From Phallusia mammillata (taxonomy: Eukaryota): 64,000 nt of DNA. A program made the position numbers and the translations under genes. This document shows positions 34,101 through 64,000 of this stretch, one piece after another; the first letter of the stretch is position 1; each line of letters begins with the position of its first letter. The stretch is from positions 1,488,001 through 1,552,000 of the forward strand of contig OZ281501.1 of assembly GCA_965637545.1 (NCBI GenBank). The letters are read 5' to 3'. The notes under the pieces were generated by a model. It did not search any database. It saw only the letters and a program-made list of their open reading frames with translations, and was not told the origin of the DNA.

Positions 34101-36509
34101 TTTCAGAAGTCTAGTTGTTTAAGAATCCAATTTTATTTATCCACAAAAACATCATACAGATCAATACGTAAAACTCATTTTGTTGGCTAAAACCGAGGAT
34201 TTGTGTTTCTTACTGGTTTGCACAAAGAAGTGCAACATATGCATGTTTCTTCTTAAAGTCAGTGTAGATGATACCAAAGGCATACCTTTTACGAGAGCAC
34301 TTACAGGATCACATAACATACCCCAGCCTTGACTTAAATATTGACAATTAAAAACAAACATATCTTAACACAAAATTTACCAACCTCCCATACTGCAAGT
34401 CCAGCTAGTATTCCATGAATTAAGAGGGTGAAAAATAAAAACCCTCTGTGAAAACTCAATGCGACATCAGATGATTTTGTCACAGCAAGTTGCTCTCCTC
34501 CTTCCTGTGCATTCTTAGCTGCATTTAGTTGCCGGGTTTGTAGCCAGTCTTTTGTGTGGCTTGTAAATCCAGCTAATATAAATAAACCCAACTTTTGTGA
34601 AAAACTTCGTGGCATATTGGAGGGCAGACCATATAAAATAAATACATTGTATGTGCAAGTCCTTGTAACAGTCAAAAAAAGGCAAGTTTTTTTTTTTGCT
34701 TTACCTTGTCGAACAAAAGATTAAACATGAATATGTTTGACCCTAACAAAACTGCCAGATACCATGTACTGTACATATATGTTTACAAGTAAAACAATCA
34801 AACATGTATTTAAACCTATAAAGCAAGAAAAAGGGCATGTATGCTCTGTTGTAAGTTAGTGCAGGTTTAGTTGTGTCTGTACAGTTAAAAACAAAACTCT
34901 AAAGTTAAAAAAAATACTAGTGGTCACTTACAGTTGGTCTGCACATAAACTTTTTCTTGAGGCTGACTGTTTCCGTTATGTTTAGCAATCCCTGGTAGGT
35001 TTGTCATTGAAACCATGTCATCCAATCTGTCGACGGGCACAATGTCTTCATCACTGAGTATGTTTGTGATTGCATTTCCATTTGAAATCACTTGGGGTTG
35101 GTCCCTAGGAAGACGGAATAATGGAAGACAATAAATCAAGAAGTAGTACAAATGTAACACCACATGTAAAATAGCCATTTGTTGCAAAAAAAATTAATGA
35201 CACTATTTATTTTACTAAAAATCAGTGGAATATAAGTAACTTAATTCTTGAGTCACAGTATGTCAGGCTTATTGAAGGCGTTATACCAAGACAGCCGGCC
35301 ACCAAACATTCACCACTGTATGGCAAGGCTAGAAAATCTAGTCTCCGGTGGGATTCGAATCCAACAACATGAATATTTCCGTGACTCGCGCTCTACCAAC
35401 TGAGCTACGCAGGCTCAGTTGAGAATCCGCCAAAAGTTAAAACACAAGCACCACTGCCTGCCTCGTATGCTGCACATGTCAGATTTGTAGAGGGGGATCG
35501 CCTTAATTTATGAGAATTGACAAATCATATTTTACCCCACACATTACTGCTGAAGCTATCGGTTTCTTATTGAAAAACAGACCTTGGGCTTCTTGACGCT
35601 TTTCTATTAGCTTGCCGCCGTCTTGCACGAGCCGCTTTTGATGTTGTTGACACATTTGCCGATGCTGCCCGCTGGTGTGTATCTGCAGGACAGATAACAA
35701 TAAAACAACTTAAATTTTGTACATTATTTAGTCAGCCGAACATAATATTTAACATAAAAATATTTTCAATCTTGCCAACTTTATAACTTATAACTAAATG
35801 TGTATGTTGTATTGTGTATATATGGTATTTATAAACTGGTTGTTTAAGTAATGTACCTCCTTGTTCAAGTTCAGGGAGAGATCTTTGAGAAGGCTGCTCG
35901 CTTTCCAACAGTTCTGGTGACCTTTTTGATCAAACAGAAACTTTAATATAGTAGAGTTGAAAATCGTATTTTTAAAAAACATTATTATTTTCTACCGAGT
36001 TTGTTTTCTCCGTGGTGATCGTTTCTTGGGTCTTGGTTCACTAACTTTTGTTGACTCCAACCCAGCAGACTCACTGCAAAAAAAGTAAGAAAAGAACTCA
36101 CCAACATTCTCGTATAACGCCATGTATACTTTTGCTCAAGACAATTTACTATTAAAAGCATCTTGAAGTGTTGTTGTACTGACTTCGGGTAAAAAAAAAT
36201 CAAGCAAACATTTTTGTGTTAACATCACAATGCTTTAATGTTTATTTACTGTTCTGTTTTACACAGGAATATTAACTAGTATTGTTTCTTTTTGACATAA
36301 CAAATACATTTACACCTTATTGGTACACTGAAATGCTCTAGACTTTGACTAAGCTTTACAACAGGTATTAAATGATGATGTATTATAACAAACTTCTATG
36401 CAACAGTTAATAAAACGTTTAAACCAACAGAAATAACAGTTTTTCACCTTGGAGTTGCTCCATCCAATGGTGGTAATGCCCTTCTTGGCAATGGTCGCAT
36501 TGTGTCCAT
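31155..36509 (-). CDS. TMEM237: TMEM237 ciliary transition-zone protein, ~371 aa; exons 36509-36448, 36073-35996, 35921-35857, 35682-35583, 35104-34932, 34572-34385, 33999-33869, 33694-33618, 32469-32349, 31750-31647, 31171-31155 (last exon tentative)
   Basis: N-terminal RPLPRRALPPL, a basic linker, then SDVALSFHRGFLFFTLLIHGILAGLAVW, TIALPLQTAFYIAVVLCFVSAMDRFNFAK and KWHAINVIRALFALLGWALIAFHP. These parallel human TMEM237 as I recall it (DVALTVHRAF-HGFLAGCAVW; SAFDRIDFAK). Phases are consistent throughout. Confidence 0.88.
32179..32230 (-). ncRNA. Minimal type I hammerhead ribozyme motif (Penelope-like-element type)
   Basis: Minus strand: ttatttacc-CTGATGA-a-ggcgacct gcgt agggcgtc-GAAAC-GTC-ggaataa. 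Core boxes are intact and stem II has 7 bp. The ACGT palindrome replaces stem III, the cleavage triplet is GUC, and stem I has 7 bp with a 2-nt bulge. AATAAA follows immediately. Confidence 0.7.
32564..32912. repeat. Degenerate ~32-bp minisatellite (about 8 units, 32641-32912) behind a hAT-like end (cagggttggaaatactcga)
   Basis: Recurring GAGTCAAGGTTTCAAAAAACTCAAATTGACTC-like unit. The second TIR was not found. Confidence 0.65.
35341..35414 (-). repeat. tRNA-derived element (SINE head or tRNA pseudogene) in a TMEM237 intron
   Basis: gcctgcgTAGCTCAGTTGGTAGAGCgcgag...GATTCGAATCCcaccggagac. The D-arm is intact, but the acceptor and anticodon stems are mismatched. Confidence 0.6.
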
Positions 36510-41083: not shown

Positions 41084-44000
41084 ATGGTGACTGCGTTGAA
41101 AGATTACGATAACAGACTCAAGGTTAAAGATAGCAGGTGTAAGTTTGGTTCGGTGCGCCTGTGTGTGGGTGCAGAATAGAACAAGGTGTGGTGTAATTTA
41201 GATAAGTTGATTTTTTCTTACAAAAAGTGTGGGTCTGTTTTAATTTTCCGTCGAGCAAGCGAAAGGAAATCTTCATAAAACTAGAAAGTTGGGTACTAAC
41301 GGTGGCATTTTAAAATCTAACAGCAATTATGGTCGAAACCGGTCACTCGCTTAAAAAGTGCAAGACGTGTTTAAAACTAAATAATTGATTTTACAAATTA
41401 CAATGAAAAAAAAATATAGCGATCTAAAACATTTTGGTTTATTGAAAAATATTATTTAACAACACGGAAAAATATTCCTACAGGGGAAATGGGATTTTAT
41501 ATGTCGGAAGCGTGGAACAATAATGTTTGCAAATATCGATCACAGGCCAAAGACAGCGCGTACGTATATGGGAGAAAACACTCTAGTCCATATGCGTCGC
41601 AAACGTGAAATAGAACGTAGGCTATTTTCGGATGCGTTCGGATATTTTCGCGCCCGAATTAGCTCGGTATTCGGCGGCTGCGATCAGCTTCGGCTATTTT
41701 CGGATGACTGCTGTCGGTAAACACAGGGCATCGAGGTAGAAATATTTAGTGACGGTGATCTATAACGGGAGTGCGTCCCGTTATGTGCTTAGAACACCGT
41801 AAACTGTAGACGCAATCGGGTAAAAATAAAGTGACGTTATTTCAACGTCGCGAAAACCATTTCACTTTCTGATTAAAAGCAACCGAAAACAATATTATTT
41901 TACTAACCGGATAATCACTATTCGAAAAACTTCCGATGACAAGAATACTGGATTTACATTTTCATGGAAAATTCAAAGCAATTAATTGGTTGTTTGTGAC
42001 GTCTCTATGGCTTCGTTGTTTCGTCACATAAATGTCAATTGGTCATTGTTGGTGACGCGTGTGTCTAGAATATAATCTTGCACGTGGATTTAACTATTTT
42101 CGCAGCAATTGTGATCATTGACGCGTGGACGGCGGTGTGATGTCATAAATTGGTTTGTTGCGTAAGCAAGCAAATTTGCGGTAAGCTACATGAATAATTT
42201 TGACAAGGTCAGTCGCAAGCAAATTTTCAGGTCTTCCGGCCCGGCTTTAGGCATAAGCAGGCAGACAGCGAATAAAATCAAACTGTAAATTTGCCACTAA
42301 GTTGGCATTTGTTGTGTCCAGATGTATATTGACCAAGTGGTAGAAAAATGCTTGGTCAAATTTGGAAGAACAGTAAACAGCGTGACACTTCCAACTCTTA
42401 AAACAGCTTCCGAAACGAGCATCTTCCGTGTTATGTTCGCAATTTGCTTTCGGGAAGCTGCTTATATGTGTCGAACATTATATTTATCTCAAACATTTTT
42501 GGATAATTTCGAGCTAGAAGCAAGGCAACAGTATATTTAATTGTGATTTTCAGGAAAGTTTTGTACTAAGTTTTAAAACTATGTTAAAAGTTAAAGCCGA
42601 CATTAGCTTGGTGCACGTTGACTAGTTGACTGGCTCGTTTGTATCAGTAGCCTTTGAATGGCATGTTTATTTGTAGCTGTTTTATTTTTAAATGTATGTT
42701 TTCTATGTTTTCAGCTTTGTAGTTGTGTAGAATAGAATGGGAACAAGCGGAAAGTCAATTTAAACTTGCCCATACATCTCGCCAACTATAGACTGAATTT
42801 AGACAAAATTGAGCCCCAACGGGATATCAATTCTCACAGTATACCTCAGAAACAAGGTAAATAATAAACATTGTTGTGTTATAATACGATTATAATGAAA
42901 TAAACCTTGTATCAAGGCGGTTTAGTTGTGTAGCACAATGCAAAACGCAGCCATTTTGACATTGTAGACTGGACAGCTATTTCACATTTTATGTTATATA
43001 CACTAATTATCACGTTTATAATTGTTTCATTTCACTATTTTTATTTGCCATGACACTTTACACATCATGTTACAAAACCATTGAAAATAATTTGCGATAC
43101 GAATCAAAATTTGATTTTCTGTTTTTTGAGCTTATTGTTACATATTGACCCTAATTTTAAATGTTTAAAATCTATTTTTACAAAAGAACTAGTAAATTTG
43201 CATTTAACCCAAATTGCCCACGGCCACCATTTTGCACAGGCACCGAAATTTATGAGGACACTGGTTATTCCGATAAATCGATAATTTTGCGAGACAATGA
43301 CAAATATGATAATAAAATGCAAGTTTATTCATCCAACCTGCATTTAAAAAAGAATTTTCCACGCCCAAAATATTCTAGTAAAACACAAGATTTTGGTTAC
43401 ACTGTATTTTGTTCAATAATCACAAAATTATAATTTTAGGGATTCAACCCGATATTATAAAAACGTATTTGGACAACTAGGGTTATTTTACACCTTTTTA
43501 GTGTTTATTGCTGTGTTCTAGCAGGCATAATAAATCGTGTAACTTTGGGTATTTCTGCATTCCATGCCATAATAATATTCAGAACCATTTCATCCACTTA
43601 TTTGTAGCAATCTCACAGCACGCTAATATTGAGCACATCAAAATGTCAGTCGTAATTTTATTTACCCACCGTTGCATGTCATTAACCCCAACTCATTTCA
43701 CCATTCAGTGCACGAACAAAGTACAACGATTGGCGAAGGAATGACCATGGATTGCGCAATCGTTGAATGTCACCCTGAAATAACTCAGTTCTACGGCTTT
43801 TCGTCGCCCCCAACCAGTTACCCCGCTGTTGTATCATCGCCTGAAGACAGCGACCTTTTCGGAACAAACCCAAGCTGGTCGCTAAGCGAAGCTGACAGCG
43901 TGGACAGGCTGCTGGAAGGCATCACCTCAGAACCGTCAGTAAACCTGCCTTGCTTGTCAGATGCATCGATTCAGGAATCGTTGAGCTTCTCACCACCGTC

Positions 44001-47000
44001 AACCCAGCCCGTTTCCACTTACCAAAGCCTGGATTCCACCTTCACAATGAACCAGCAATGCAGCCCTGTTATGGCGCCTCAAGTGTACGACCACGCATGC
44101 CCACAGAACGCCAACTGGCTCCTGGAGCATCAAGGCCCACCTTGCGACAGCTCTAGTTGTTCACCAGCAACCAGTGGAGGGCGCTCTGTCATGGATGCAA
44201 CTTTGGATGAACTCCAGGGTCTTTACCAGTGTGATGAAATCCAGCCCAGCGAAATTGAGGCCGGAATCCAAAACTTTCAAGCCACAGAGTACGCACCGCC
44301 TCAAACCTTCTCATCGGGATTCGAACCCGCAACCGATGGATTATACGAAGAGCACGACTTGAATACAACCCAATGTTACAGCTACAACCAATCGCAACAG
44401 TGCAATTTTTCAGCTGTTGTGAAACAGGAACCGGGTACTTGCTTCGAACATGTGGGCTACAGAGAACAGCCTACTGCTGGTAAGAATGTTATGAATATAT
44501 TTGGTTTTAAAATAACAAGGAAAACCGCAGATTTTACTAAAAATGACTTATTTTGAGTGTTTTGTTCTGATCAACCTGGTTTTACCATAACCCACTTTTT
44601 CTGGCGATTAGGTATTTGATTTACTTGGCCGAAATTGTCGCTAAAGAGAACAGATATGGTTTCAAACTATTTTTGTCGGCATAACTAGTGTTTATAGTTG
44701 ACTGCAATGACTGACAAAGCAAATGAATTATCTGTTTATCGCTTGTCGATACCCTTGAACTTTAAACAGGGCAACGGTGGTTGAATTTGAAGAATTTGAA
44801 GTGTCCTGTTTTCTTTTAAAGCGCCTTACATTGAAAAACTATGTGTCCAATTTCTAACCTACTTTCTAAATTTCATAACTAATCACTATTTACAATGCTT
44901 CAAACCTTGGCAACACGAGCTTGTTGAAGCGTAAACCAAGTAGCATGGTAACGGATTTTATGTTTTACATCTAGAAACAAAATGCTAAAGCTAACTTTTT
45001 ATACATACAGAACCTATTCGTTGCAATATTTAATGCTAAGGGCTGTTGCCATTGGGATCAAGCCTAAGATCTCTTATTAGACAGCCTTACAATTTTGACT
45101 GATATGCACTAGGGTGATAAAAAAAATAAGTTAATGCCTTGGTGCAAATTTTTTAGTTATAAGAGAAGCCTGCATTTGAATATAGTTACACGTTATGTAC
45201 TTAACAATTTGTCTTGACAATTTTTATAGGCGACTACTGTCAGTTGATGAGCAATAACCCATCTCGCCGAAGATGCAGTCTTACTCCACAGCAAGCTCTT
45301 CCACACAGGAACTCATTTGGCCGCCAGATGTCACAAGAGACACCGTCGCCTACTCGCACCAAATTTACTCTTCAACAGCAACACTCCTTCTCCGACCCTT
45401 CGATCCCTGATTCCCTGCGTCCTGAGGCTCCTCCCTACAGCTCCCTTCCTCCAAGATACCCGACTTCTTCAAGCATAGCATCCGGACACGTTTATCCCTC
45501 GTGTTCGATGCCTCTTACTGTGAACCAACACCGAACTGACAACTTTGGAACTCAAGTCACTTACGTACCGAAGCAGCAAGCACTCTTGCCTCCGCAGACT
45601 TGCGTATTTGCTCCCACCTCTACCCCCTTCTTCAAGCAGAAGCCTGCATCCTTTTCACAGGTGTGTATTTGATATTAATTTTAATTACTATACCTTATTA
45701 TTTACACTCTATTGAAATGCTTGCCGTTCTATGCATTATAAATGTAATCAATAGCGGATATATTTAAGCCCGCCATTTTAGTTTCTTAATCGCCACATTT
45801 ATACACAATATCAAATTGACAAACGTGGTCGAAATGCGTAGTCTTTTAGTATGTGAAGATTCTTACATTACCATTTAACCGTTTGTTGGTTTGTATTTAC
45901 AAATGCCAGCATAGAAATTGCGAGTCAATATGGCCATTCTGTTCAAAGCCTTTAAAGTTAAGGTCCAACCAATTTCAATAAAGGATTAATTAAGAAGCAA
46001 ATGCTTCTGACTCAAAATCAGTAGACACTGAGTTGGTAGTTCGAGATATATATTCCACCTATTCAGGCGTCGTCAGTCTCTAAAAAACTGCAAACAAACG
46101 AATGCCTACTATTAGAGGGACAGATCGTGTGAATAGCAATTATGTCAACCAATTTCAATGAACACTTCGTATTATATAACCCGTATCGGATGCTTGCACG
46201 CTTAAGCTGGTATGATGCTGTATACATCACACAACACATCAGAAACAAAACTTAAAACACGCCATTGCATTAGCGAGAGTGAGATAGAGAGAGAGTGTGC
46301 AAGAGTGGGGCATGTTTGTGTGAACAACAATGCTCCCGTGATAGTGTTACTGGAACTGTTTACACCTTGCAAACCTGCTGCCCCGTCCACTTGTTATACT
46401 GGCCAAGCAACGTCTGTTCGCTGTCGCATTTTCGCTCCAAACCGCCTGAGGCGAACCGGTGATGGTGCCGGTCGCCACACTACTTTTCTGAAGTGAATTT
46501 TCTACTCTGATCGCTATCAAAAAGCGTTAGATCGAAAATAGGCGGAGTGCAGTCATGTTTTTTGACCTTATTGCAGAATATACTTACTGTACATCAGCTT
46601 TGGGAAATTGTGTGTGAAAATGGTTAGCGGCGGGAAAATGTGCTGCGAATTACCGCCATTTGTCCTTCCCGACGCCGTTACCGACACTCACGCCCTTTTT
46701 CTCCCCTATCATAATCGCCCAGTTAGTTGAACTGCTCAAGCGAACGTCGTATTAGTTGACAAAGGACAGCAGAGCACTAAAGTCGTCTGCCAAGTGAAGC
46801 AAAAGGACAATACAGACAAAAGACTTCAATTGCAGCTTTTTTAGACCTAGTGCTAGACTTCGTACAGTTTAATGAAGCATTAACTCATTCAAAGCCTACA
46901 ATGTAGTTTATTGTGCAGTTTTAAGAAACTATGTTATATTTTGCCAGCACCATGCCCGTAGCAGAAGTAAATGAGATTTGTGCAAATGTGTTTAGATTTT

Positions 47001-50000
47001 TACACAATTTTGAAGTTTAAAGTTGAGGTTATTTTCTTTCTTTTGTCGAAGGCTCCCCCTTAAGGTTTGTGTGTTATCAAGTAGGAGGGCTAAACTCCGC
47101 AAACTTATAGGCGGGAAAAACATGCTGATAGCGCAAGAATTGAAACAATCAACCCGACTCACTTGCCTTGAGAACGCAGCAACATGAGCAGACTGGACTT
47201 TACGTTCCAGCTCAGTAACAGAGGGCCAGGGGGGTTATTAGGGACTTCCCCGCAGCCCCACGACGTCTTAGCAGCTTTGAGGGGTGCGCAAGATCTGCCG
47301 AGACTTTCTGAGTCGATCCTGGATGGTCAGGTCCTGGACACAGACCAAAGATCCTCATCGTCATCTTCACTCATCGGATTTGACGATGCTGACGTCACTG
47401 AGATGCATGAGACGCTGCTCGATAGGGGGCTTATCGCTCATCCGCTTAAAGAAAAGTTATACGAGCAGTCGTATGGGAGGAAGAGCCCGATAACAATTCA
47501 CTCGCTCACTACTTCGGGCGGAGGGCTTAAGATATCGGGAAATATGGCTCCCTCCAACGGCTACACTCGCAAGTGGCATCGCAACGCTCAGGACGTCAGT
47601 CTTGCCGCCGTCCTCTCGCCTACTACGTCACAATGGCTCAATCCAGGTATGACGTCATTGCATAAGACGTCACCCGAGCCGCCTACGTCATCACCTAGTG
47701 ACTTGGGTTTATTGGACGAAGAGCGAAATCAGTCTGGGACTTTTAATCGAAACTTAGGGGTCTACTCGGGGACGCCCCCTACTTCACCTATTGACTTGGT
47801 CGGGTTTCGAGTCCCCGAATCGCGCTTGAACGAAGACTTTGACTTTTTGTCGGAAATGAAGGCAAAACAAAAACCGATTGTTTCGCAACAACACAGTTGG
47901 TCGGAAAACACGCGGCGTCGATATTTGTCGTTTGACCCTGTCTTCAGTTCACCATTTGACCTTAACCCAAGGTCACGGAGCACGGTCCATGACCTTGACT
48001 ACCCGAGTGGCGAGTCGACCCATAGCTTCAATGAAGATTCTGTAAAGTTTGAAACTGTGGAGCGATCAGCTACCGAAGCTTTGCACCCAGAATGCAAAAT
48101 CCATCTTCTTAATCAGGACTTTAATGCATCCACCTCATCTACCTCACAAGGCATGCACTGTACGAGCAACTCTTCACGCCAAACTGACCTGCAATCGCCA
48201 TCACTCCAGCTTCCAAACCTCTTTCAGCATCCTCAAAGCCATCAGCATATTCACCAGCACGAGAGCTCTGTGAGCAAACGCAGACGTGTTTCACTTCCAG
48301 TGGGTCAGCCGATTCAGATCAGCCACCATGGTTACCCACACCAGCACTTCAACGCACATCTAAATAATAACAACAACGGCGGCAACAAAATTGACGTAAA
48401 AATAGAGTATTTTTCACCTGACGATGTCCGGCTAAACCGGGTGAAATTCTCCCCGTCGCATCCTAGCCACCAGCACCAGGTATATTTCAAAGAGTGGTGG
48501 TAGTGGAAAGGAAAAAATAGTTACACTTAGATGCATTTTATAAAGATCTGAGCCAGTTTGTGGTTTCGAAAATCGTTAAGTCCATCAATTTAAAGTTCTA
48601 AATTTGATTGGTTGCAACCGAGTTCTCAAAATGTATTTAAACCGATAAAGATAATGGTAAAATGTCATAGTCGTGTATGCAGCATTTTCTATTGGTGGAT
48701 CTCAACAAATTTGCGCGCTTCGTGATATTATTCCCCGCACGTTTAATGACCCCAAGCTAACTGAGTAAAGTCAGGTACTGCGTGCGCAAGGCGTAATATT
48801 TTTGGCAATGACCAACGTGCCAGACACGACATTGGGTGTAAATGTCACATAACAAACATACGTCACTGCTTGTAACAACCAACACCTGATGTTTTTTCCA
48901 CATTAATAGGGAATGTCAGCAAGTACCAAGCACTCGCATTTAGGCAAGCAGCTGTTACAGTCGCTGAGAGAAACGGGCAAGCGAGTTTTGAAATGCTTGT
49001 AGTACCAAGAACCGAAGTGCCAGCCTTTAGCCGCGGGGCTTGAAACCGGGCTCCAACCATAGCGATCATTTTGCTCGTACTGTGCGCTAATCATACACGA
49101 AACACTCTGTCGTTGCGCCGCAAAGTAGCATCCAATGGCCGTATCGGCTTGGAACTGTCGGCGGTGTGTAATTCCATCAAAAGCTGTTGTTAAATGGCGC
49201 GACGAACGATCCCGGCCGTTTATTAAACGCGGATTGTTTTCGTGCGTGGCACCGCGATTGGACGATATAACACGTCGCTACGTCAACAAACAACCTTATG
49301 ACGTAATAATATCGGATCTGGGTGTAACCAGTAAGATAGAGTTGGGGTTTGAATTCGACTAGCCTCATTTTTTTAATGCATATGGCTAATTGATTACTTG
49401 AAAACATTTTCGGCCATTTATCAACATATAATACTAGTTTGAAACTTATAGGTTTGCGTTAGGAACATGTGTCATCTTTTTATTTTAAATGAGCTACATT
49501 GTATATTTTGTAACCGGCACTTAATACAATTACAATTAACAAGTTTAGTTACCATAATACATTCTTTTGCATAATCAAAATGCTTTTTTCACAATTTTAC
49601 ATGCTAAATTATTTTTGTTTTAATTTGCAGGGTCGCTCCAAGACCTCCCTACCTACCCCAATTGTGGGCCCCAGCACTTCACATGCCCAAACTCACCCCT
49701 CAGTGTCACCCCTAAGCCAGGGTTCATACGGGGGCTTCGGGGAAGGCACCTGCGCAGTTTGCGGTGATAAAGCAAGATGGCAACATTATGGAGTTCTTGC
49801 TTGCGAGGGATGTAAAGGTTTTTTCAAGGTACGTTAAATTGCTCTCTTGACGCAAATTACAATGCAGGTGCAGCCACATCCGACTGTGATTTTTTGTGTG
49901 GGCGTGAAAAGGCGTGCAAAACCAGATTTTTATGTTTTTTTTGCTCTTTACAGCGTTCGGTCCAAAAGGACGCAAAATACGTCTGTCTCGGAAACAAGAA

Positions 50001-52770
50001 CTGCCCGATCGACAAGAAAACCCGCACACATTGTCCGTACTGCAGATACCAGAAGTGCATCTCAGTTGGAATGATAAAAAACGGTGAGTTATGAAAAAAA
50101 ACAATACAAAATTTTTAGCAATTTTTAAACAAATTAGATTTATTTATTTATTTTTCAAACAATACCAATTTTGTGTTTAACGTCAGAAAAAGTTTAAAAC
50201 ATTTTTTACGACTTACTGGACAAAGCTGACTCGCAAACCCGCTTAAACTTTGCAACATATTTCGAACAAATGCAATTTTATTATTTTAGGGTACACATGA
50301 TAAAAATCTAAAAAGTAAATTGAATTAAAAATAAATTGTAACCGAAGTAGCCGTTTTTGGTAAACGGTTCCATGAATAAATGGCGGCATAGGAATGTGTA
50401 TTGAATAAAGTAGGCTTCGCGATTTATATTGAGGAGAAATATTTCTTCTGGGTATTCGCCAGCTGATCTTTATCACGCTCCAATCGTTGTGATTATCGTA
50501 ACTGTTACGCGGTTTGGTCTTTCCTGGGCGAGAAGCCCAAAGACTTGTGCTGCCAAAAAACACAAATTCCGTGTTCCAGTTTGACCTGTTTTGAAAATTC
50601 TATAAACGCGGCCGTTTTTGACACATAGAAATTCTATGTTAAAATGGAAGTGCTATTAAAATCGAATATTTGAGAATGAAAACATTAATATTGAAGTACT
50701 AAAGTCTGTTATTGCGTTTAATTTCTGTTTTTGATTACGAATAGTAAAATTTCTTTTAAACTGCTATGCTTTCTTACAACTGTGTGATATTTATACACTT
50801 AAATTCTCATAATTCATATATTCGGCAAATTGTTCATGTCTAATTTTGTACAAACTGACTTGTAACAGAATCAGCAATCAAAAATCTATTTTCAAGTTTT
50901 AATAGCACGTTTGGGTTTTCTCTAACATTCCATTTAAGCGATGTTGCGGTTTTTCTCATTTTACCAAATTCACACGAATTTCACGAAACGCCAATCGCTA
51001 TAAAGTGACTTTCTTCACAAAAACGCAACATATGTCGGTTAAAAATAAACACAGCGATTTTTTTGCGGCGGTGAGATCGAATTTTACGCAAAGTGAGTCA
51101 TCCGAAAGCGTTGTAGTCACGTACGATAAGCATGAACGCACACACGCAAGGTCAAAATCACTCATGCGATTCGCTGCGGAGAATGGCTCGATTGTGACGA
51201 AACAATGAAAGACGAATTCCGCGTCATTAAAGCGCCAAGTTCCAGTTTATAGTTCGTCCAAACTATGCTTGGTTTGGAATTACAGCGCCTTGCTTAAGGA
51301 GAAATGGCTTCCGCCTGAAAACTACAATTAGGTTCGGGAAACGCCGACTGGAAAATGAAAATGTGGCGGGCGCGATCTTTTTCAGGATAAAGATAAAATT
51401 ATGGGGGATGTGAAAATACGTGGTGGAAAAAAAGTACGTTGGCGTTCATAAAAATTTTTCTGCCTGCGAAAACTGTTTTTTCTTTAATAGGGGAAATATA
51501 AATGTTTTATTTTGCACAAACATTTTCACACGGTTTCAATCTATTGTCATTTTATACACTTTGTTGTTAGTTAATTCCCACCCTTTGACAAAGCTTTAGC
51601 GATTTTTAGGGCCTTAAAACAGATGCAACCACAAGTACAGCTGGCGTTGACACGTTTACAGGCAACATATAACAAATCCAAGCATAGGGTTCAACAATAC
51701 ACCTTGCATCGCTGTGAAAATATTATCCTCACAGCAGAAATGTTACGCGGTGTTCGTGAGAAAGTTTTAGTGCTCCTAAAACCATTGACGCACCAGTAAA
51801 GTAGTAATCGTTGCAACGAACCGTAGCAAATTGGCAATAAACACGTATTTTCATGTCAGCGTGCAGCTGAAACGATTCTGTTCACAGGTTTGGAGTTTAG
51901 GGACCCAAGCAGTATAATACCTGCATGACCTGTTTTTGTTTGTGACGTTCATGCAACATTATGACGTGGCGGTCAATGTCATGACCTCAAGCGACGTAAT
52001 GGGTTCACGCGAGTTCGTTTTCGTTTGTTCCCATAGACGGCAGCCAGCTTTGTTTATTTTACATCCTGATTGAACGCCAAATTATGAGATTAACCTATCA
52101 CCTTTGTAATGTTTGGACTCGAAAATATGCGCGTCCTGTTTGCAAAGACCGGTTATCGATGCATGGCTACAAAATTTTGGGACACTTATGTTTAAGTGAT
52201 ACGACACAGAATTTTATTTACGGTTTTAAGCGCCCAAAACCCACCAATCATTGTTGTGCTAAGAAAATATTTTTTTAAACTCACAAATATTTATAAAAAA
52301 ACAATTTGGTGTGTAAATACAAACCATAAATACATTTTCATATGCAATATATACAAACACTTGATTAAATTGCACAAAAATTATCACTAAAACAGACGAT
52401 TAAATACTTGATTTATCTTTTTTGGTTTATGCAATATCTTTCCAATTGTTCTTTACTTAATTTTACTTTTTTCTTTCTAGTTGTTCGAATCGACCGACCA
52501 CGAAAACCATCCAAGACCAAATCGTCGAATAAGCCATCAGTCAACCAAAGCAAGCCCAGTCCTATGATCCAACCCCTTCCCAGCACCACGTGTCCCCTGA
52601 CCACCACATCAGCCAATCACAACGTCAACATCGCTCACGTGACCACACATGCGCGTATCCATGGTGACCAGCATCCACAACAACAGCAGCAGCAACCGCA
52701 CCAAAACTTCACCGGTTTCGACCTTGCCGCGCACCAAAGCTCAAGCTCTATGCAAACATTCTTCCACTAG
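41084..52770 (+). CDS. NR4A: NR4A-like nuclear receptor lacking a ligand-binding domain, ~1047 aa; exons 41084-41138, 43709-44479, 45230-45660, 47211-48479, 49631-49828, 49954-50083, 52481-52770
   Basis: [32 protein letters not shown]|[43 protein letters not shown]|VVRID is closest to NR4A (QHYG, CEGCKG, VQKxAKYVCL, VVRxD). Intron positions after FFK and before VVR match NR4A. All junctions are in phase. A stop follows ~96 aa after the DBD. The exon-1 ATG is in good Kozak context and in frame; ATG 43741 is an alternative start. Confidence 0.85.
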
Positions 52771-54616
52771 AGGGATTCGAGAGCGGACGATTTGATTGAC
52801 AGGCGGGTTTTGCACACGGCACGCGCCCGGGTTATTTTTGGCGGGACGACATTTCGCAAACAAGCAATCCAAGTGTGATTGTCGTTTCCGGTGGCCCTTG
52901 TGCCCGATCTTGGTGACGTAACAATGGAAGGAAGCGCTTCGTGACGTAACAAAGGAGAAAGCCACGTCGCTTGCACATTAGGTGGCGCCATTCTTGCCAA
53001 AAACTAACTTTCACATTTTATCATTTCATCACCAGTTACTGCACAGTCCTGAGATTTCGTCAAAGTTTCAATTTTCGTTTATTTTTCTTCCCCGGTGTCC
53101 TGCACTTTATTTGCTGCCTTCTACGAAATTATCTTTGCCAAAATAGAAACAACGTAAATCCCTACTCCCAGGACAAAGTCCGGGTCATCAACATTCCGGA
53201 AGTATTGCCAAGTATAGATTGTTCCAAAATAATAGCATTGTTTACGTCATAAGGACCCAAGATACTTTTGCTGGCATTATTTTCTCTCGACAATTTACTG
53301 CCTATATTCTGTTGTAATTTTTCATTTCTCTCAAAAAAGCCTATTTTATGCTACGATTTTTTGCTCATGTTCGTATTATATTTGTTATTCTATTTTTTCT
53401 GTTGTCATTTACGAAAAAAAATTTAAGTTTCGTATGAAAGTATATGAAAGAAAAATTATATTTTTGCCCAAATTCGCTTCTATATATATGATATGTGTAT
53501 TTTTTTGTTGCATCATACTTTTTAGTTTTGCGTAAAAACTTTCAATTTGGGAACCGTATTCTTTCACAAAACATGATTTTCTTTTTAAACTTGCCAGTGG
53601 CCAGGGCGTTATGCCTCACTGCCTTTCCGTAACACGTGCGTGCGCAGTCAAGCGAAATAAACAGTCGATGCATGAAATTTTTTCGTCCGACCGTAAATTG
53701 TTTTGCAGAAAACACATCGAAAAATCAAATTAATAAATTGTAGCAGAAATTTTATTTTAAGGAAATAGTAAAAATGTCCGCAAATTTAAAATTCTAGCAG
53801 AGGGTTCCCTAACCAACTTTAATCAGTCAAGCGCAGCGACAAGTAGTTCAGTACAGAGTTAGAAATGGTTTTATATACTAACAAGCTTGATGAGTATGTT
53901 GACAATTTTTTCCTCCAAAATACTATGAGGCCGATTTACTTAATCAGGAAATATACTTCAAACGTTTGTTTCATTTTAATCCTGGGTGGGCGGGCAACGT
54001 ATAAATTCGTTCTTCTGGCAATGAACTCACCGTGCTTGTCTGTTGAATTATTTTTATTGATTTTTACGAAGTTGCAAGTTCAAAGGCGCTCGCGCTAAAC
54101 AGTCAGATATCTTGGCAGATAACGTTGGAACATTGTTTGCAATGGTCTTCTCCAAAAGTCAAATAAAAACCGCAACAATGGTACGATGCAAAACAGCGCC
54201 TTAACTGTGAAATCTAAGGTCACATTGTAATGTAACGTAAAGATTTATCTCAGTGTTTAAAGTCAGCAAGGGCGTTCACAAAAACCTGGAGATTAACTAG
54301 AACGAGTGATTGGCCAAATAAATTGCCAGAGATTTAAAAAAAATCGAAAAAGCAAAACAACCATATCAAAATGCTATTCGAAAAAGCACTGGAATCATTT
54401 CTTTGTGTTAGGATATTAACCACACAGCACATAGTATCAACCCGTGAGTGTCCGAACATAGATATTTTTGTGCCCTTGTTTGTTGCGAACAGAGAATACA
54501 ACGCCAATGAAGATCACTACCGCCACCATGCGAGAATCATCCAGCGGGAAATTTAGAACGCTACAGTTTCTACAGAGAATGGGATATTTTTGTTTTTGTG
54601 AAGGACATACGACGCC

Positions 54617-54935
54617 TGTAAGTCGGGCCGGGTTCGGGTTCGGGTTCGGGTTCGGGTTTACGTTTCTTCAAAAACGAGCTTTATTCGGGCCTGGCTTTAC
54701 ACTCTGTGTCAGTATTTGTTAAATTTAACTAGCTTAGTAGCCAGTTGGTGGACCTGACCTAACGTCAAACAGCCATAACACGCCTTGTTCAAGACCAATT
54801 GACTATTGTGTTGGTTCTCTTGGTCTTTCCTAAAGCTTTAATGTGCAGGACTGTCAATCACACTTTTGGGCCTAAACGGACATCTTAAACACGATTCGGG
54901 TTTGGGCCGAGTTTTCGGGCCCGTTTACAACTCTG
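54617..54935. mobile_element. Family B element (reverse orientation) with a (GGGTTC)n subterminal run
   Basis: Reverse-complement homology to 14880-15206. Ends with cccgtttacaactctg. Confidence 0.75.
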
Positions 54936-55712
54936 GTATCAATTATTTAATGCGTGACATTCAAACTTCAAAGATCTATTGGCGATACCCAAAACGTCAA
55001 GCCTATACAAGCTAACAGTGCACTGACAATTGTGTCTGACTAAACGTAATCTGGTTTAAACAACTACTACTGAAAAATTTATATCTTATCAAGTCAGACA
55101 GCTTTTAAACTGGTAAGAATGTAATATTTCTGTAGGCATGTTATTACATGGTAAGCAGTTCAATGGACACAAATATATACTTTCGACGGTAAGAGCTACT
55201 CGGGCTGGGGTGAGGGTTGTAATTGAAATAATACTAGAATCTGGTCTCATTTACCCGTGTTAGGGCTTGCATTTTACTTTCCACACAACTCTTGGTTTAA
55301 TGCGGTAACATACGGTATTTAGTACCACCCGTTATTAATTTCTTTGTAAGCAAGGATAACAATTTAAGTTACCACATGGTAAAAGTTATTGAGGTGGTTA
55401 AAATAATAGTTTGTCAGACTTATTTTACCATTTTTTTTACAGTAGAAGTTACAATACGGTGCTAGTAGAGAATTTACTATCAAATAGAATAAAACCTTAT
55501 GTGGAAACATACAGCTACGAAGCTATCACTTACGACTGGAGGAAGTCAGAAATGCTTAGGTTTCATTTTTGTCATCAATTGTTGTTGTTTTTCGCGTGGT
55601 TGCAGTTTTTGTACAAAAATCTTCTTTTTTGCTAAAGCCCCCATATGCGATATGTTCATATCGTTTAGAAGCCGACAAAGAGAGATCAACCAAGAATCTG
55701 CACAGAAACAGT

Positions 55713-56466
55713 ATGAAGAAATCATCAGTAATGTCTAAAACATGTTTGATGTTGTTTGTTGTTGCCTTGGTCTTGACAAGTCATTCAGCTACAGCAAAGG
55801 TAAGCTTGTGTTAACTGCTAATACTTTGCAGAAAAAAAAATCTTGCTGGGACACCAGTCTATTGCGGTCAGTGCTAGTAACAACGTATATGTTTGACTGC
55901 ACAAAGCTCGTTGGGAAACTCTCGTTTCGGTTATTAAATTTGTGCCAGTAGCTATAGTTGTTTACGTAAAGCTTGTTAGGGGACCGGACTTTAGCGTGCA
56001 ATACCGTGCAGGTAACAAGCGCCATGGCAGATACGACAAAGCTTGTAAGGAAACCTGCGTTTGGGTTGTAAATTCGTGCCCGTAGTCATGGTTGACTGCA
56101 TGAAGTTTGTTAGGAAACCCGCTTTAGGTGTGCAAAGTCGCAAATTTAACAACTACTGGATTACTGATTAAAGTTGATGTTTATATTGTGTTTACAGTGG
56201 ACATGCTACTGCCTCGAGAATTGCGCTGACTTTTCATTGACAATACGTAAGCAAATTTCTTACCTAAAATTCACTATTTTATCGCTTTAAAATTTTGGGC
56301 ATTGATCGTCCGTTAAATTCAAAATCGTTGATTTTTTGCAGTGTTTAACATCTGCCAAGCCTGTAAGCTCACGGGTATTGCGGGACTAAAGATGAAGAAC
56401 AAACAATCACCAAATAAAATGTGTTTTGGGTGTAATAAAACAGCTGACTGTTTACAACTGGTGTAA
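55713..56466 (+). CDS. Small secreted cysteine-rich peptide of unknown family; exons 55713 (or 55731)-55799, 56198-56246, 56342-56466
   Basis: Signal peptide MSKTCLMLFVVALVLTSHSATA ends near the exon 1 boundary. Donors are GTAAGC and acceptors are tttacag / ttttgcag. Only the phase-compatible frame of exon 2 is open. The end of exon 3 is uncertain. Confidence 0.65.
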
Positions 56467-56477
56467 ATGATTGTATG

Positions 56478-56656
56478 CAGAGGTGGAAATCAGCCGGTTC
56501 GCACCGGTTTTACAGAACCGTCTCACGAAATGTTATGAGATCAGCGAACCGGTTAGCATTACTGGTTAGTGTCAATAGACTTTTTGTGACAGAACCCGTT
56601 AAAAAATATGGCTTTTGTGATAGAACCGGCTGACAAAAAATTGAATTCCACCACTG
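56478..56656. mobile_element. hAT-type MITE, family C
   Basis: Homologous to 26129-26309 in reverse. Ends cagaggtggaaatca / tgaattccaccactg. Confidence 0.8.
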
Positions 56657-56781
56657 TGTTTATTTCTCATCGTGAAGGACAACATAGCAACTTGAACAAT
56701 CACCGAGTCGGAAATTGTTACACAACGGTGTGACTTTATTAACGCAAAAACGTGGATAATGCAAATGTACTTTGGTTGAGA

Positions 56782-57970
56782 CAGAGTGGTAAACAGGCCT
56801 GAAACTGGAGTCCGAAACCCGACCCGAATCGTTTTTGAGAAACCCTTTTAGGCCCAAAAGTTTGTTGACCAGCCTATACAGTGAAGACTCGGGAAAGACC
56901 AAGACAACAAACACAATAGAAAATTGGTTTTGAACAGGACTAGCCTATTAAGGTCGGTTTGACAGAAGGTCAAGTCCAGCAACTAACTATTTAGCTAGTT
57001 AAATTTATTCAAAATATATTGACGCATTGTGTAAGGCAGCGGTTCCCAGCCTGTGGGTCGCGACCCCAACTGGGGTCGCCTGACAATTTGCCTGGGGTCG
57101 CCGAAGGGAATGGCTCCCAACTCATTTTAGGCCATAGACTAATTTAACAAATAAAAAACAAAAGAACTGGGCACCACATTCCTTCCCTTCATTGTTTTTT
57201 AAAGTATGTAAACTAGTAACTACATCTGGGGTGGATGTTTAATTTTCGAAGATTTAATCGTTTTCACAAAATGCTAAATATTGCCTGGTATTATTACGTA
57301 ATAATACTGCATTCACATAATCATTAAGTCAGAACCTGCCAACTTGTTTTGTATTCTCGCGATAATATGGCGGCGGGGTGGTGGCGAACACCGTGGATAT
57401 TTGGGTTTGTTTGTATCGGTATCTTACGAAACACCGTAAAATCTGAACAAATTTGGGAACAGTTTTGCTTTTGAACAAGCGTGCTGACGAAAAAGCAACT
57501 AGTTTGGTTGGTGCCTTACTTGTATGACGTCAAACACACAATTGTTGGCAGTGAATGATTGGCCACTATGGTGTACAATGCGATTGTTCTGTAATAAATG
57601 GTCACTTTGGGTGATACAAAAGCAACGACTTGACGAAACTGTTTCTAAACATTGCTAAACCAAAAAAACGTTAAAGCGAATTGTTCCAAATCAATATTAT
57701 TTTAAAAACAATTTTTTGTTAAAATTGACGAACTTTGCTTTTTATTAAAAGTATATTGGGCTTTGAGTTGGAGCTCGTTTGGTTGCACGCATTAGTGACG
57801 TCATAATTTAAATCCACCACCTTGCATTTTTGTAAAACTCGGCGCCTATGCGTGGGGTCACCTCAACTTGGGAACTGTTTTAAGGGGTCGCGGCACCAGA
57901 AAGGTTGGAACCGCTGGTGTAAGGTCAGGCCCAAATTAAGCGCGCTTTTTGAAGAAACCCAAGCCCGAAT
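56782..57970. mobile_element. Family B element interrupted by a nested hAT element
   Basis: Homology to 14880-15206 stops at gtgtaagg (57029-57036) and resumes at 57917. Confidence 0.75.
57037..57916. mobile_element. ~880-bp non-autonomous hAT-Charlie element nested in family B
   Basis: TIRs cagcggttcc / ggaaccgctg. Perfect TSD gtgtaagg. ggggtcgc subterminal repeats. No transposase ORF. Confidence 0.9.
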
Positions 57971-58175
57971 TCTGGGTTGAAATGTTAAAAGTTTAAGACT
58001 TAATGTTGTTTGACAGAGATTGAATTCAAATGAAACACTTAATATGCAGGAAAAGTAAAGTTATATAAAGAACAAATATCAAATTCTATACTTATTTTTT
58101 ATAGTTGTCGGTATTATTCTATTTCAGAAAATAGCAATTTAGAGATTTTAAAACAACTACTTGCTCTATCTATAG

Positions 58176-58734
58176 CAGGAGTGGGCAATTAATTTTCAAA
58201 GAGGGTCACATAAGCAAACTGACTTGTGTTGGAGGGCCGAACTAACAATAACATGAACTGAAATCTGCTCAGTACTAATTTTCCTCATCATTTAAAGATT
58301 GAAATATATATTTGTGATTAAAAGAATAAGAGTATTTTGTAAATATTTGCATTGAGATTTTCGAAATTTTTATTTAATTTGTCAAATCAAATTTGCGTTT
58401 TGCGCTTTCCAGTTTGTAAAAATCAGACAATTTATATTTTTTTGCTATTCTTCCTGTTTTTTCGACAACACAGGCTATATCACGTAACATTGGGTGGACA
58501 ACTTGTGTTTATATCGACTTTACCCAGCATCACTTGTAGTTGTTGTGCGTTGCTACGTGAATATATATAAAAAAACATGGCAAAATATATTTTAAAATAA
58601 AAACAACACTGCCGTATTTCACACACACAGCATAAATGAGCCTATTTTTCCTTAATTACTTGACCTCACACGGGCCAGACAGGGACAGCCAACGGCCTGG
58701 ATGTGGCCCGCGGGCCGTAAATTGCCCACGTCTG
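58176..58734. mobile_element. hAT-Charlie-type non-autonomous element
   Basis: TIRs caggagtgggcaatt / aattgcccacgtctg with the typical tggcccgcgggccg subterminal motif. TSD eroded. Confidence 0.75.
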
Positions 58735-59110
58735 TTATAGGTTGGTACGCAGCGATAAAAAGCCGTCAGATGGTAAGGTTGAGACCCACTGCAGTAGACC
58801 GAACGACGACCCATGAATAGGCTAACTATATTTCAAAAAAACATATAGCCGGTATATGTCGAGCGCACAAAAATTGTTAAATATCTGGTTTAGGTGGTAC
58901 GCAGCAATAAAAAAGTCGCCAGGCCGAACGCGATCACTTTAAGGTTGAGAATTGCTGCAACAGGCCGTTTGACATTTCATAAACAGGCTATACTCACCCG
59001 TTTAAAAAAAAATCAGTCTATAAATGCCAACTGTACAAAGAATAAAAAAATACGACAAATTTATTGCAAATATTATAAATACTGCTCTTCAACAAACGAA
59101 AAAAGTGACG

Positions 59111-62100: not shown

Positions 62101-62414
62101 TATGATGTCTGGTTTCAAAGCTATAGTTTTTAATAAACAATTGATTCAAAAGCAAAGATAGCTTGATTTTTTTTAGTTCAAAGAATATGTAAGAATTGGG
62201 TTTCAAATTTAATTTTACAACAAATGAATAGGGCATAAAAAACATTAAAGAATGTACATTACAAAAAAGAGGCCAAAGAATTAAAAAGGTCAAGAAAAGT
62301 TTACAAAAAATGTGTTAATGAGTCACCTTGATAGACACCATCACGAATGTGTTCGTTGCGACATCGATTTCCGAACTTGCATTTTCCCTGCTGAAAAAAC
62401 TTACACACAACCAT
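59111..62414 (-). CDS. NUP42: Nucleoporin NUP42 (NUPL2/CG1), ~383 aa; exons 62414-62327, 62056-61985, 61346-61278, 61222-61142, 61084-61012, 60644-60448, 60122-60020, 59957-59830, 59451-59111
   Basis: N-terminal CCCH finger MVVCKFFQQGKCKFGNRCRNEH, central IQDDMKVW-MWPYSCY-GLPDIQPEELR, and C-terminal Gle1-binding motif LTDEELEQFQNERFTLGEIPMRPPPKEMC. Phases are consistent. Confidence 0.92.
61490..61856. mobile_element. hAT (Ac-like end) MITE in NUP42 intron 2
   Basis: TIRs tagtgatgcac / gtgcatcacta. Perfect TSD attgctac (61482-61489, 61857-61864). Confidence 0.9.
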
Positions 62415-63884: not shown

Positions 63885-64000
63885 GTTGATTCGTAGTCGA
63901 AATGACAAAACCACCAACTTATGGAAACAATATTTTATTGCACAGTCTACAAGTAAATCGTGATATCTATAGAAACCAATACGATTGAAAAAACAAACGA

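What the first reader, a model, noticed from the sequence alone, without database searches (positions are those of the whole stretch)
41084..52770. NR4A-like receptor with a giant N-terminus and no ligand-binding domain
Seen: the spliced ORF has ~880 low-complexity S/P/Q-rich residues before the first DBD cysteine. It ends at TAG 52768-52770 after a ~96-aa P/S/H/Q-rich tail. I found no LBD-like exon between 50083 and the next gene at 55713. Established: NR4A proteins normally have a 250-300-aa A/B region and a C-terminal LBD; DBD-only receptors are known mainly as the arthropod knirps group (NR0A). Inference: this is either a lineage-specific DBD-only NR4A paralogue acting as a constitutive activator or a competitor, or a truncated sole NR4A.
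Basis: partly seen in the sequence, partly recalled or inferred. Interest (0 to 1): 0.8.

Follow-up and report, generated by a model that had tools for sequence, protein, structure and literature searches.

The report
Sea-squirt NR4A-like receptor without ligand domain
This is a real, expressed sea-squirt gene for a nuclear receptor of the NR4A type that has a DNA-binding domain but no ligand-binding domain; it is already in public databases, is shared by all tunicates checked, and sits beside a normal NR4A gene elsewhere in the genome, while the claimed giant N-terminus comes from joining two alternative gene starts.

Summary
The window comes from Phallusia mammillata, chromosome piece C8.

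**No ligand-binding domain: confirmed.**
- Transcript contigs from four studies splice 49828>49954 and 50083>52481.
- They then run unbroken through TAG 52768-70 to about 53688, just past AATAAA at 53656.
- Neither the Pfam LBD model nor an amphioxus NR4A LBD finds anything nearby.

**Already catalogued.** The gene is UniProt A0A6F9DMT5, "NR-like nuclear receptor", 637 aa.

**Tunicate-wide.** The Ciona (two species), Styela, Clavelina and Oikopleura orthologues also carry only the zinc-finger domain.

**Not a truncated sole NR4A.** A canonical NR4A with an LBD (A0A6F9DN65, 1034 aa) lies 13.85 Mb away on the same chromosome. On a DBD tree the LBD-less clade (100/96) is sister to canonical NR4A (91/92 against 16 other receptors).

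**The ~880-residue N-terminus is not supported.** It joins two alternative N-termini:
- alpha: exons 43741-44479 and 45230-45660, giving 595 aa;
- beta: ATG 47184 to 48479, giving 637 aa.

Each splices directly to the DBD exon. Ciona has the same layout.

**Likely function (inferred, untested).** A ligand-independent factor that binds NBRE-type half-sites and is driven by disordered N-terminal regions. It may compete with canonical NR4A. This scan has noted the same stretch once before.

The parts
43741..44479 (+). Exon A: first coding exon of the alpha isoform (MTMDCAIVE...), ending in phase 1 at the donor CTG|gtaagaat
   Evidence: The open frame and splice sites are. It aligns collinearly from residue 1 of Ciona isoform X2 (P0006) at E 4e-5. 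There is no direct read evidence for the start codon.
45230..45660 (+). Exon B of the alpha isoform. Its donor CAG|gtgtg splices directly to 49631 and skips exon C.
   Evidence: The X9 contig's loose end equals window 45628-45657 plus CAG. It aligns to Ciona X2 residues 268-329 at E 3e-5. The acceptor ttttatag|GCGACT is shown.
47065..48479 (+). Exon C: first coding exon of the beta isoform. The probable acceptor is at 47065, the ATG at 47184 (MSRLDF...), and the donor is CAG|gtatat after 48479.
   Evidence: The loose ends of X1, X5 and X15 equal window 48447-48476 plus CAG. The exon matches cDNA protein P0001 with one G/E difference. An in-frame TGA lies at 47169-71. The 5' boundary is inferred.
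49631..49828 (+). DBD exon 1: first zinc finger and P-box ([26 protein letters not shown])
   Evidence: The Pfam zf-C4 hit is. The GT..AG joint 49828>49954 appears in all four runs.
49954..50083 (+). DBD exon 2: second zinc finger, through GMIKN
   Evidence: The Pfam zf-C4 hit is. The joint 50083>52481 appears in all four runs.
52481..53688 (+). Terminal exon. It holds the C-terminal extension VVRID plus a basic stretch, a 96-aa disordered tail, the stop TAG at 52768-52770, a ~920-nt 3' UTR and the poly(A) signal AATAAA at 53656-53661.
   Evidence: Contigs lie on 52480-53671 (X1), 52480-53688 (X15) and 52480-53369 (X5), with no joint or loose end leaving the exon.
41084..41136 (+). It is not verified and is probably not part of the coding sequence.
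   Evidence: Sequence only. Ciona isoform X2 begins at the MDCA motif that matches 43747. No reads were laid on this part.

Best explanation
The locus is the Phallusia mammillata gene deposited as 'NR-like nuclear receptor'. It is a paralogue derived from, or sister to, NR4A. It keeps an NR4A-type DNA-binding domain and part of its C-terminal extension, and it ends about 96 residues later with no ligand-binding domain.

Two mRNA classes are made with alternative N-termini:
- alpha: exons A and B, 595 aa;
- beta: exon C from ATG 47184, 637 aa.

Both classes share the two DBD exons and one terminal exon that carries the stop and the poly(A) site. The same LBD-less architecture is found in all tunicate lineages with a named orthologue. 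The two alternative N-termini are annotated in Ciona, Styela and Clavelina. A canonical NR4A with an LBD coexists in the Phallusia genome.

Inferred mechanism, not tested:
- The protein binds NBRE-like extended half-sites as a monomer through the conserved P-box and the basic extension.
- It cannot use LBD-dependent functions such as RXR heterodimerisation or AF-2-type co-regulator docking.
- Its output is set by expression level, by the choice of N-terminus, and probably by phosphorylation of its long disordered N-terminal regions.
- Where it is co-expressed with canonical NR4A, it would share or compete for sites.
For: Transcript structure and 3' end:
- Four studies show the joints 49828>49954 and 50083>52481.
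- The terminal exon is continuous through TAG to 53671-53688.
- AATAAA lies at 53656.

Absence of an LBD:
- Pfam PF00104 has no hit near C8:1.54 Mb at E<=10.
- The amphioxus NR4A LBD finds nothing there.
- A relaxed tblastn of two NR4A LBDs against 50084-64000 gives only noise, with best E 0.36.
- Pfam finds only zf-C4 in the protein.

Identity: 100% match to UniProt A0A6F9DMT5 over exon C.

Conservation:
- Orthologues in Ciona intestinalis, C. savignyi, Styela clava, Clavelina lepadiformis and Oikopleura dioica carry PF00105 only. Vertebrate and amphioxus NR4A carry PF00104 as well.
- A 3-kb transcript contig of another unnamed relative stops 6 aa after the DBD and has a 1.4-kb 3' UTR.

Paralogy: a canonical NR4A lies at C8:15.39 Mb, with LBD pieces 43-66% identical to amphioxus. 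It equals A0A6F9DN65 and has both Pfam domains.

Affinity to NR4A:
- The best solved-structure matches are the NR4A2 and NR4A1 DBDs at 124-132 bits, against NR5A2 at 109 and RXR at 107.
- In the tree, the LBD-less clade has 100/96 support. Together with NR4A it has 91/92 support against 16 other Phallusia receptor DBDs.

Alternative N-termini:
- Ciona, Styela and Clavelina each have two isoforms of this kind.
- The Ciona locus has the same exon order and the same neighbouring genes on both sides.

Disorder: the ESM Atlas model of the whole protein has mean pLDDT 0.43.

The binding mode is inferred from 70% DBD identity to NR4A2, including the P-box, and from established knowledge of NGFI-B binding as a monomer.
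Against: - No functional data of any kind were available here. DNA-binding specificity, activation versus repression, and co-expression with canonical NR4A are all untested.
- The A-box RGR of NR4A is not kept in Phallusia ([12 protein letters not shown]). It is only approximated in Ciona and Styela, and it is absent in Oikopleura. Extended half-site recognition may therefore differ.
- All reads laid were assembled contigs. Rare isoforms, including a B>47211 join or a cryptic donor in the terminal exon, would not be seen.
- The tree has only 69 columns. The timing of the duplication is unresolved: a tunicate-specific duplication is not rejected (AU p=0.18).
Confidence: 0.85

Rival explanations
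1. The protein mainly acts as a natural dominant-negative or competitor of the canonical NR4A. It would occupy NBRE sites without LBD-dependent co-regulator or RXR contacts, as the vertebrate short isoform Nurr2c does.
For: Its architecture matches vertebrate short NR4A isoforms, which stop right after the homologous VVRTD/hinge exon. [quoted passage not shown] The DBD is 70% identical to NR4A2 and has the same P-box.
Against: The gene keeps 430-472 aa of conserved N-terminal sequence with several conserved motifs, in two alternative versions. A pure blocker would not be expected to need this. NR4A activity in vertebrates rests largely on the N-terminal AF-1 (established knowledge), so an LBD-less form can still activate. 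No co-expression data were available.
Confidence: 0.3
2. LBD exons exist but were missed. They might be very diverged, far downstream, or used only in rare or stage-specific isoforms.
For: Contigs drop rare variants. An exon-by-exon search of a genome can miss short or diverged exons: five other DBD loci also lacked a Pfam LBD hit.
Against: The dominant transcripts in four studies end at a poly(A) signal 0.9 kb after the stop. No LBD signal was found in the 11 kb downstream, even at E<=50. The flanking genes are the same as in Ciona, where the gene also ends about 2.4 kb before the next, convergent gene. Every tunicate orthologue model lacks PF00104, whereas the canonical NR4A LBD in the same genome was found easily.
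Confidence: 0.04
3. It is the species' only NR4A and has been truncated, either as a decaying pseudogene or through an assembly break.
For: None remained after testing.
Against: A canonical NR4A with an LBD is present and deposited as cDNA. The LBD-less DBD is 94-96% identical between Phallusia and Styela. The gene is expressed and correctly spliced. The window has no N run.
Confidence: 0.01

Closest known systems
NR4A subfamily (NGFI-B/Nur77, Nurr1, NOR-1; insect HR38)
   Same: The DBD is about 70% identical, with the same P-box [10 protein letters not shown] and D-box region CLxNKNC and the GM(V/I)K-VVR(T/I)D junction. Intron positions match those of the canonical Phallusia NR4A: after GFFK and after GMxK(E/N). 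It groups with NR4A on the tree. The alpha N-terminus MDCA...QFYG..SP loosely recalls MPCVQAQYG.SP.
   Different: It has no LBD. The first finger carries the tunicate-specific [12 protein letters not shown] instead of NAACQHYGVRTC. The A-box RGR is not conserved. A true NR4A1/2/3 orthologue exists separately in the same genome.
C-terminally truncated NR4A isoforms of vertebrates (NOR-1 beta / NR4A3 short isoforms, Nurr2/Nurr2c)
   Same: These proteins also end shortly after the exon that begins VVRTD, which gives N-terminus + DBD + hinge with no LBD (P0105, P0112, P0017). Nurr2c is used as an endogenous dominant negative (PMC11100346).
   Different: In vertebrates these are minor isoforms of a gene that also makes the full receptor. 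Here the short form is the only detected product of a separate gene, and that gene is conserved across tunicates.
NR0A DBD-only receptors (Drosophila knirps, knirps-like, eagle) and C. elegans ODR-7
   Same: They are nuclear-receptor zinc-finger DBDs with no LBD that act as ordinary sequence-specific transcription factors. This rests on established knowledge and was not tested here.
   Different: The origin is independent. This clade derives from, or is sister to, NR4A and is restricted to tunicates as far as seen. No knirps sequences were compared here.
LBD-less androgen-receptor splice variants (AR-V7 type)
   Same: They have a long disordered N-terminal domain plus a DBD with no LBD and are constitutively active. 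The nearest ESM Atlas feature clusters were AR isoforms, but at 0.77-0.80, below the tool's own threshold for trust.
   Different: They belong to a different subfamily (NR3C) and arise by splicing in disease. This is an analogy only.

Membership tests
Nuclear receptor superfamily | C4-type double zinc-finger DBD (Pfam PF00105) | tested here: met
   PF00105 scores 102.9 bits over residues 472-540 of P0001.
Nuclear receptor superfamily | Ligand-binding domain (Pfam PF00104) | tested here: not met
   The protein has no PF00104 hit. There is none in the genome near the locus and none in the downstream 11 kb. The transcripts end 0.9 kb after the stop.
NR4A subfamily | DBD closest to NR4A and grouping with NR4A in a phylogeny | tested here: met
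   The top solved-structure hits are NR4A2 and NR4A1. The best non-tunicate database hits are all NR4A. NR4A plus the LBD-less clade has 91/92 support against 16 other receptor DBDs.
NR4A subfamily | One-to-one orthology with NR4A1/2/3 | tested here: not met
   The canonical orthologue is a different gene at C8:15.39 Mb (P0123). The canonical clade, including tunicate NR4A, excludes the LBD-less clade at 86/72.
NR4A subfamily | C-terminal extension with T/A box (VVRTD...RRGRLPSKPK) for NBRE recognition | tested here: inconclusive
   VVR(T/I)D is kept in ascidians. A basic cluster follows (PRKPSKTK in Phallusia, RRKAAKTK in Ciona, RRGSSKSR in Styela), but the RGR is not conserved and Oikopleura lacks VVRTD. 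DNA binding was not assayed.
NR4A subfamily | NR4A-type LBD with a filled pocket and an atypical co-regulator surface | tested here: not met
   There is no LBD at all.
NR0A (knirps group, DBD-only receptors) | DBD-only architecture | tested here: met
NR0A (knirps group, DBD-only receptors) | Sequence kinship with knirps/knrl/eagle (kni-box next to the DBD) | not tested
   No knirps-group sequence was fetched. The tree places the clade with NR4A, so common descent with knirps is unlikely.

The most novel reading that the evidence does not exclude
Tunicates as a whole carry a dedicated DBD-only nuclear-receptor lineage that split from NR4A. It would be a chordate counterpart of the arthropod knirps-type receptors. 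In it, the short LBD-less product that vertebrate NR4A genes make only as a minor isoform has become a separate gene. That gene has two alternative disordered N-terminal regulatory regions, and this family-level picture has not been described in the literature.
Probability: 0.45. Interest if true: 0.5.

Novelty: already known. Interest (0 to 1): 0.3.

Why it matters
This corrects the finding. The gene is not a new discovery: its protein and its Ciona orthologue are in UniProt and NCBI with only the zinc-finger domain annotated. The animal has not lost its NR4A ligand-binding domain, because a normal NR4A sits elsewhere on the same chromosome.

What may still be useful to nuclear-receptor specialists is the family-level picture assembled here:
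- an LBD-less sister lineage of NR4A, conserved from larvaceans to ascidians;
- a conserved two-N-terminus gene layout;
- termination at the same exon where vertebrate NR4A3 short isoforms stop.

I found no paper in the searchable library that states this. The two most likely sources, Yagi et al. 2003 and Gomes et al. 2019, were not available. Ciona and Phallusia allow easy knock-out and reporter tests. The gene is therefore a tractable case for asking what an NR4A-type DBD does without its LBD.

Tried and rejected
- **LBD remnants downstream.** A relaxed tblastn (E<=50, word size 2) of the Phallusia and amphioxus NR4A LBDs against 50084-64000 gave only scattered noise on both strands, with best E 0.36.
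- **Giant ORF.** A+B joined to the acceptor at 47065 runs into a stop at 47185-87. Only an unsupported acceptor at 47211 keeps the frame open. I rejected this as the main product.
Joined to the AG at 43707-08, it falls out of exon A's frame. Other acceptors were not tried.
- **Pfam on exons A and B.** No family was found.
- **ESM Atlas search of the N-terminal 465 aa.** Feature scores were 0.77-0.80, below the tool's threshold for trust. Structural TM scores were at most 0.23. The result is uninformative beyond showing disorder.
- **The look-up of encoding contigs for P0001.** No record.
- **tblastn of the alpha isoforms of Ciona, Styela and Clavelina against the window.** Only the DBD exons were found. 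Pairwise BLASTP was needed to show the exon A and B homology.
- **Literature.** Eight searches found no statement on LBD absence in the tunicate gene. Yagi 2003 is not held.
- **Scan notes on this genome.** Nothing relevant to nuclear receptors.
- **Not used.** I did not run the costly representative-protein search, structure prediction or complex prediction, because the questions were settled without them.
- **Not resolved.** Whether exon C is reached by trans-splicing or from an upstream non-coding exon.
Full report
**Where the window lies**

The window is G000:C8:1488001-1552000 of a 240-Mb genome. The coding sequence matches Phallusia mammillata proteins at 100%, so the organism is that ascidian.

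**The observation**

- Pfam zf-C4 hits lie at window 49748-49834 and 49939-50079.
- The sequence shows the acceptor ttgcag|GGT at 49631 and the donor AAG|gtacg after 49828.
- It shows the acceptor ttacag|CGT at 49954 and the donor ACG|gtgagt after 50083.
- It shows the acceptor ttctag|TTG at 52481.
- The last exon reads [12 protein letters not shown]... and stops at TAG 52768-70 after 96 residues.

I laid the contigs of four runs from four studies on 49600-55599.
- All four show the joints 49828>49954 and 50083>52481 with GT..AG ends.
- In all four, a single contig continues from 52480 through the stop codon: to 53671 (X1), 53688 (X15), 53369 (X5) and 52809 (X9, followed by overlapping contigs to 53662).
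- No joint or loose end leaves this exon.
- The only AATAAA before the contig ends is at 53656-61.
- The window holds no N run.

The dominant mRNA therefore ends here, with a ~0.9-kb 3' UTR and no LBD exon.

**Is an LBD hidden elsewhere?**

- The Pfam Hormone_recep model, run over the whole genome in six frames at E<=10, has no hit near C8:1.54 Mb.
- An amphioxus NR4A LBD (P0038:345-596) also finds nothing there.
- A very relaxed tblastn of two NR4A LBDs against 50084-64000 gives only noise.
- Pfam sees only zf-C4 in the protein.

**A canonical NR4A exists**

The amphioxus LBD search did find four collinear pieces (66, 47, 52 and 43% identity, E down to 3.5e-14) at C8:15390011-15391133. They lie directly after DBD hits at C8:15389514-15389887. 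The ORFs there read [45 protein letters not shown] and typical NR4A LBD helices. This gene is UniProt A0A6F9DN65, "NR41/42/43 nuclear receptor", 1034 aa, with PF00105 and PF00104. The window gene is therefore a paralogue and not a truncated sole NR4A.

**Identity and spread of the window gene**

The 433-aa exon C translation matches UniProt A0A6F9DMT5, "NR-like nuclear receptor", 637 aa, at 100%. My spliced beta model differs from it by one residue, G/E at position 207.

I searched with its DBD region. The best hits, all carrying PF00105 only, are:
- Ciona savignyi H2YUF8;
- Ciona intestinalis Q1RLF6 (656 aa) and isoform X2 (588 aa);
- Styela clava LOC120341980 (746 and 624 aa);
- Clavelina lepadiformis LOC143468248 (528 and 478 aa);
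- an Oikopleura dioica model (426 aa);
- several unnamed metagenome or transcriptome proteins.

The next hits, at about 70% identity, are vertebrate NR4A3/NR4A2 and amphioxus NR4A. Nearly all of these carry PF00104 as well; the few without it are partial models or short isoforms.

After the DBD:
- the ascidian proteins end 60-102 residues later;
- the named Oikopleura model and one unnamed relative end about 20 residues later;
- two other unnamed proteins (P0015, P0120) end 6 residues later.

One of the last group comes from a 3-kb transcript contig with a 1.4-kb 3' UTR. Loss of the LBD is thus shared by phlebobranch, stolidobranch and aplousobranch ascidians and by a larvacean.

**Phylogeny**

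I extracted 16 further DBDs from the Phallusia genome. My family labels for them (RXR, HNF4, COUP, TR2/4, NR2E, NR5A, ERR, TR, ROR and others) rest on my own reading of the sequences. On 69 aligned columns:
- the LBD-less clade is monophyletic (100/96);
- canonical NR4A (amphioxus, vertebrates and two tunicates) forms its sister (86/72);
- the two together are separated from all other receptors (91/92).

Forcing the LBD-less clade and tunicate NR4A into one clade costs 4.7 log-likelihood units and is not rejected (AU p=0.18). A tunicate-specific duplication followed by fast divergence therefore remains possible, and so does an older split.

The best solved-structure matches are the NR4A2, Nurr1 and NGFI-B DBDs (124-132 bits), ahead of NR5A2 (109) and RXR (107).

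**The N-terminus**

The evidence is against this.

1. X9's contig joins ...[11 protein letters not shown] (window 45628-45660) directly to 49631. The contigs of X1, X5 and X15 join ...[11 protein letters not shown] (48447-48479) to 49631.
2. The deposited cDNA protein starts at ATG 47184. The motif MSR(L/I)DF is the annotated start in Ciona (two species), and Styela and Clavelina start with close variants (MSQLQF, MSRLEL). An in-frame TGA lies at 47169-71.
3. The X1 and X15 contigs both end 1418 nt upstream of 49628. If collinear with the genome, that is about 47062, next to a good acceptor (ctcccccttaag|G at 47065). Exon B joined there reads into a stop at 47185-87.
4. Ciona isoform X2 starts MDCAVEF...QLYGYTSP and aligns collinearly with exon A (E 4e-5) and exon B (E 3e-5). 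It then goes straight to the DBD exon.
5. In the Ciona genome the order is alpha exon (10001-11212), beta exon (12049-13404), DBD exons and terminal exon (16071-16376), with two annotated products of 588 and 655 aa.
6. Styela and Clavelina also have two isoforms that differ only in the N-terminus.

The frame stays open only with an internal acceptor at 47211, which would give 854 residues before the first cysteine. Nothing supports the use of that acceptor. The real products are alpha at 595 aa (430 before the first Cys) and beta at 637 aa (472 before it). The canonical Phallusia NR4A is the one with a very long N-terminus, about 692 residues.

**Context**

Connexin and TMEM237 lie upstream on the minus strand. 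A NUP42-like gene and a ribosomal L12-like gene lie downstream. All four flank the gene in both Ciona and Phallusia. The locus is therefore orthologous, and there is no unexplained space for missing exons.

**How it probably works**

Shown:
- The DBD is intact and highly conserved, at 94-96% identity between Phallusia and Styela.
- It has the P-box of NR4A.
- The extension VVR(T/I)D plus a basic cluster is kept in ascidians.
- The rest of the protein is predicted to be disordered, with mean pLDDT 0.43.
- That disordered part still carries conserved short motifs in the beta N-terminus: [59 protein letters not shown] and DVKIEY. There is also a weak MQ(S/T)(I/F)(Y/F) motif near the C-terminus.

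Inferred from established NR4A biology (monomer binding to NBRE through the DBD plus A-box, and activity largely from the N-terminal AF-1):
- The protein is a ligand-independent, sequence-specific transcription factor.
- Its activity depends on how much is made, on which N-terminus it carries, and probably on phosphorylation. RRRYLS and RRRVSLP look like basophilic-kinase or 14-3-3-type sites; this is my reading and is untested.
- Without an LBD it cannot use LBD-mediated RXR pairing.
- It may also compete with canonical NR4A. Vertebrate NR4A3 short isoforms stop just after the same exon, and Nurr2c is used as a natural dominant negative (PMC11100346).

I rate the structural and evolutionary statement at about 0.85-0.9. 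I rate the activator-type mechanism at about 0.5 and a mainly inhibitory role at about 0.3.

**Novelty**

The gene and its DBD-only domain content are already in public records. A 2026 Ciona paper mentions "the ortholog to NR4A" without detail (PMC13078634). I found no paper in the library that describes the LBD-less lineage, but the primary surveys were not readable here. I therefore file it as already known, with a moderate chance that the family-level interpretation is undescribed.

Noticed in passing
L002 (G000:C8:15384001-15394000), ORF 3726-5594 and following exons: The canonical Phallusia NR4A (A0A6F9DN65, 1034 aa) has about 692 residues before its first DBD cysteine. That is far longer than vertebrate NR4A N-termini. 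Its C-terminal helix-12 region (…RMYTHKMESQNVPMPQCLQRSLEIPANHV) differs from the vertebrate/amphioxus LFLDTLPF ending.
   Followed up: partly
window ~27182-28647 (-), ~31654-35714 (-), ~59105-63138 (-), compared with L020: Gene order is conserved between Ciona and Phallusia around the NR-like gene: connexin, TMEM237, NR-like, then NUP42/Amo1-like and ribosomal L12-like genes (tblastx).
   Followed up: partly
G000:C6:20919430-20920038 (L009): This DBD has the TLX/PNR-type P-box CDGCSGFFKRS (NR2E-like), although a review (PMC7827873) states that TLL/TLX was lost in tunicates. The Pfam search found no LBD beside it.
   Followed up: no
G000:C6:10323277(-), C1:12402872, C7:133749-135795(-), C4:10261707-10262966: Four further receptor DBD loci (by my reading NR5A-, TR-, NR1H- and PPAR-like) had no Pfam LBD hit in the exon-wise genome search. 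This is probably a sensitivity limit, but it was not checked.
   Followed up: no
window 50215-52259: In run X1 only, low-depth contigs (depth 3-10 against 256 on the exons) tile the 2.4-kb intron. This fits unspliced pre-mRNA or DNA carry-over in that library.
   Followed up: no
window 54686-54717 and 55299-55333: Short pieces (about 32 nt) of unrelated contigs from X1, X5 and X15 match here, with loose ends on both sides. They are probably fragments of a dispersed repeat or of other transcripts. One lies next to a skipped simple repeat at 54621-54668.
   Followed up: no
P0001 residues ~255-265 and ~395-402 (window exon C): The conserved motifs RRRYLSFDP and KRRRVSLP in the beta N-terminus look like basophilic-kinase or 14-3-3-type phosphosites. 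They are kept in the Phallusia, Ciona and Clavelina beta forms, and the second also in Styela.
   Followed up: no
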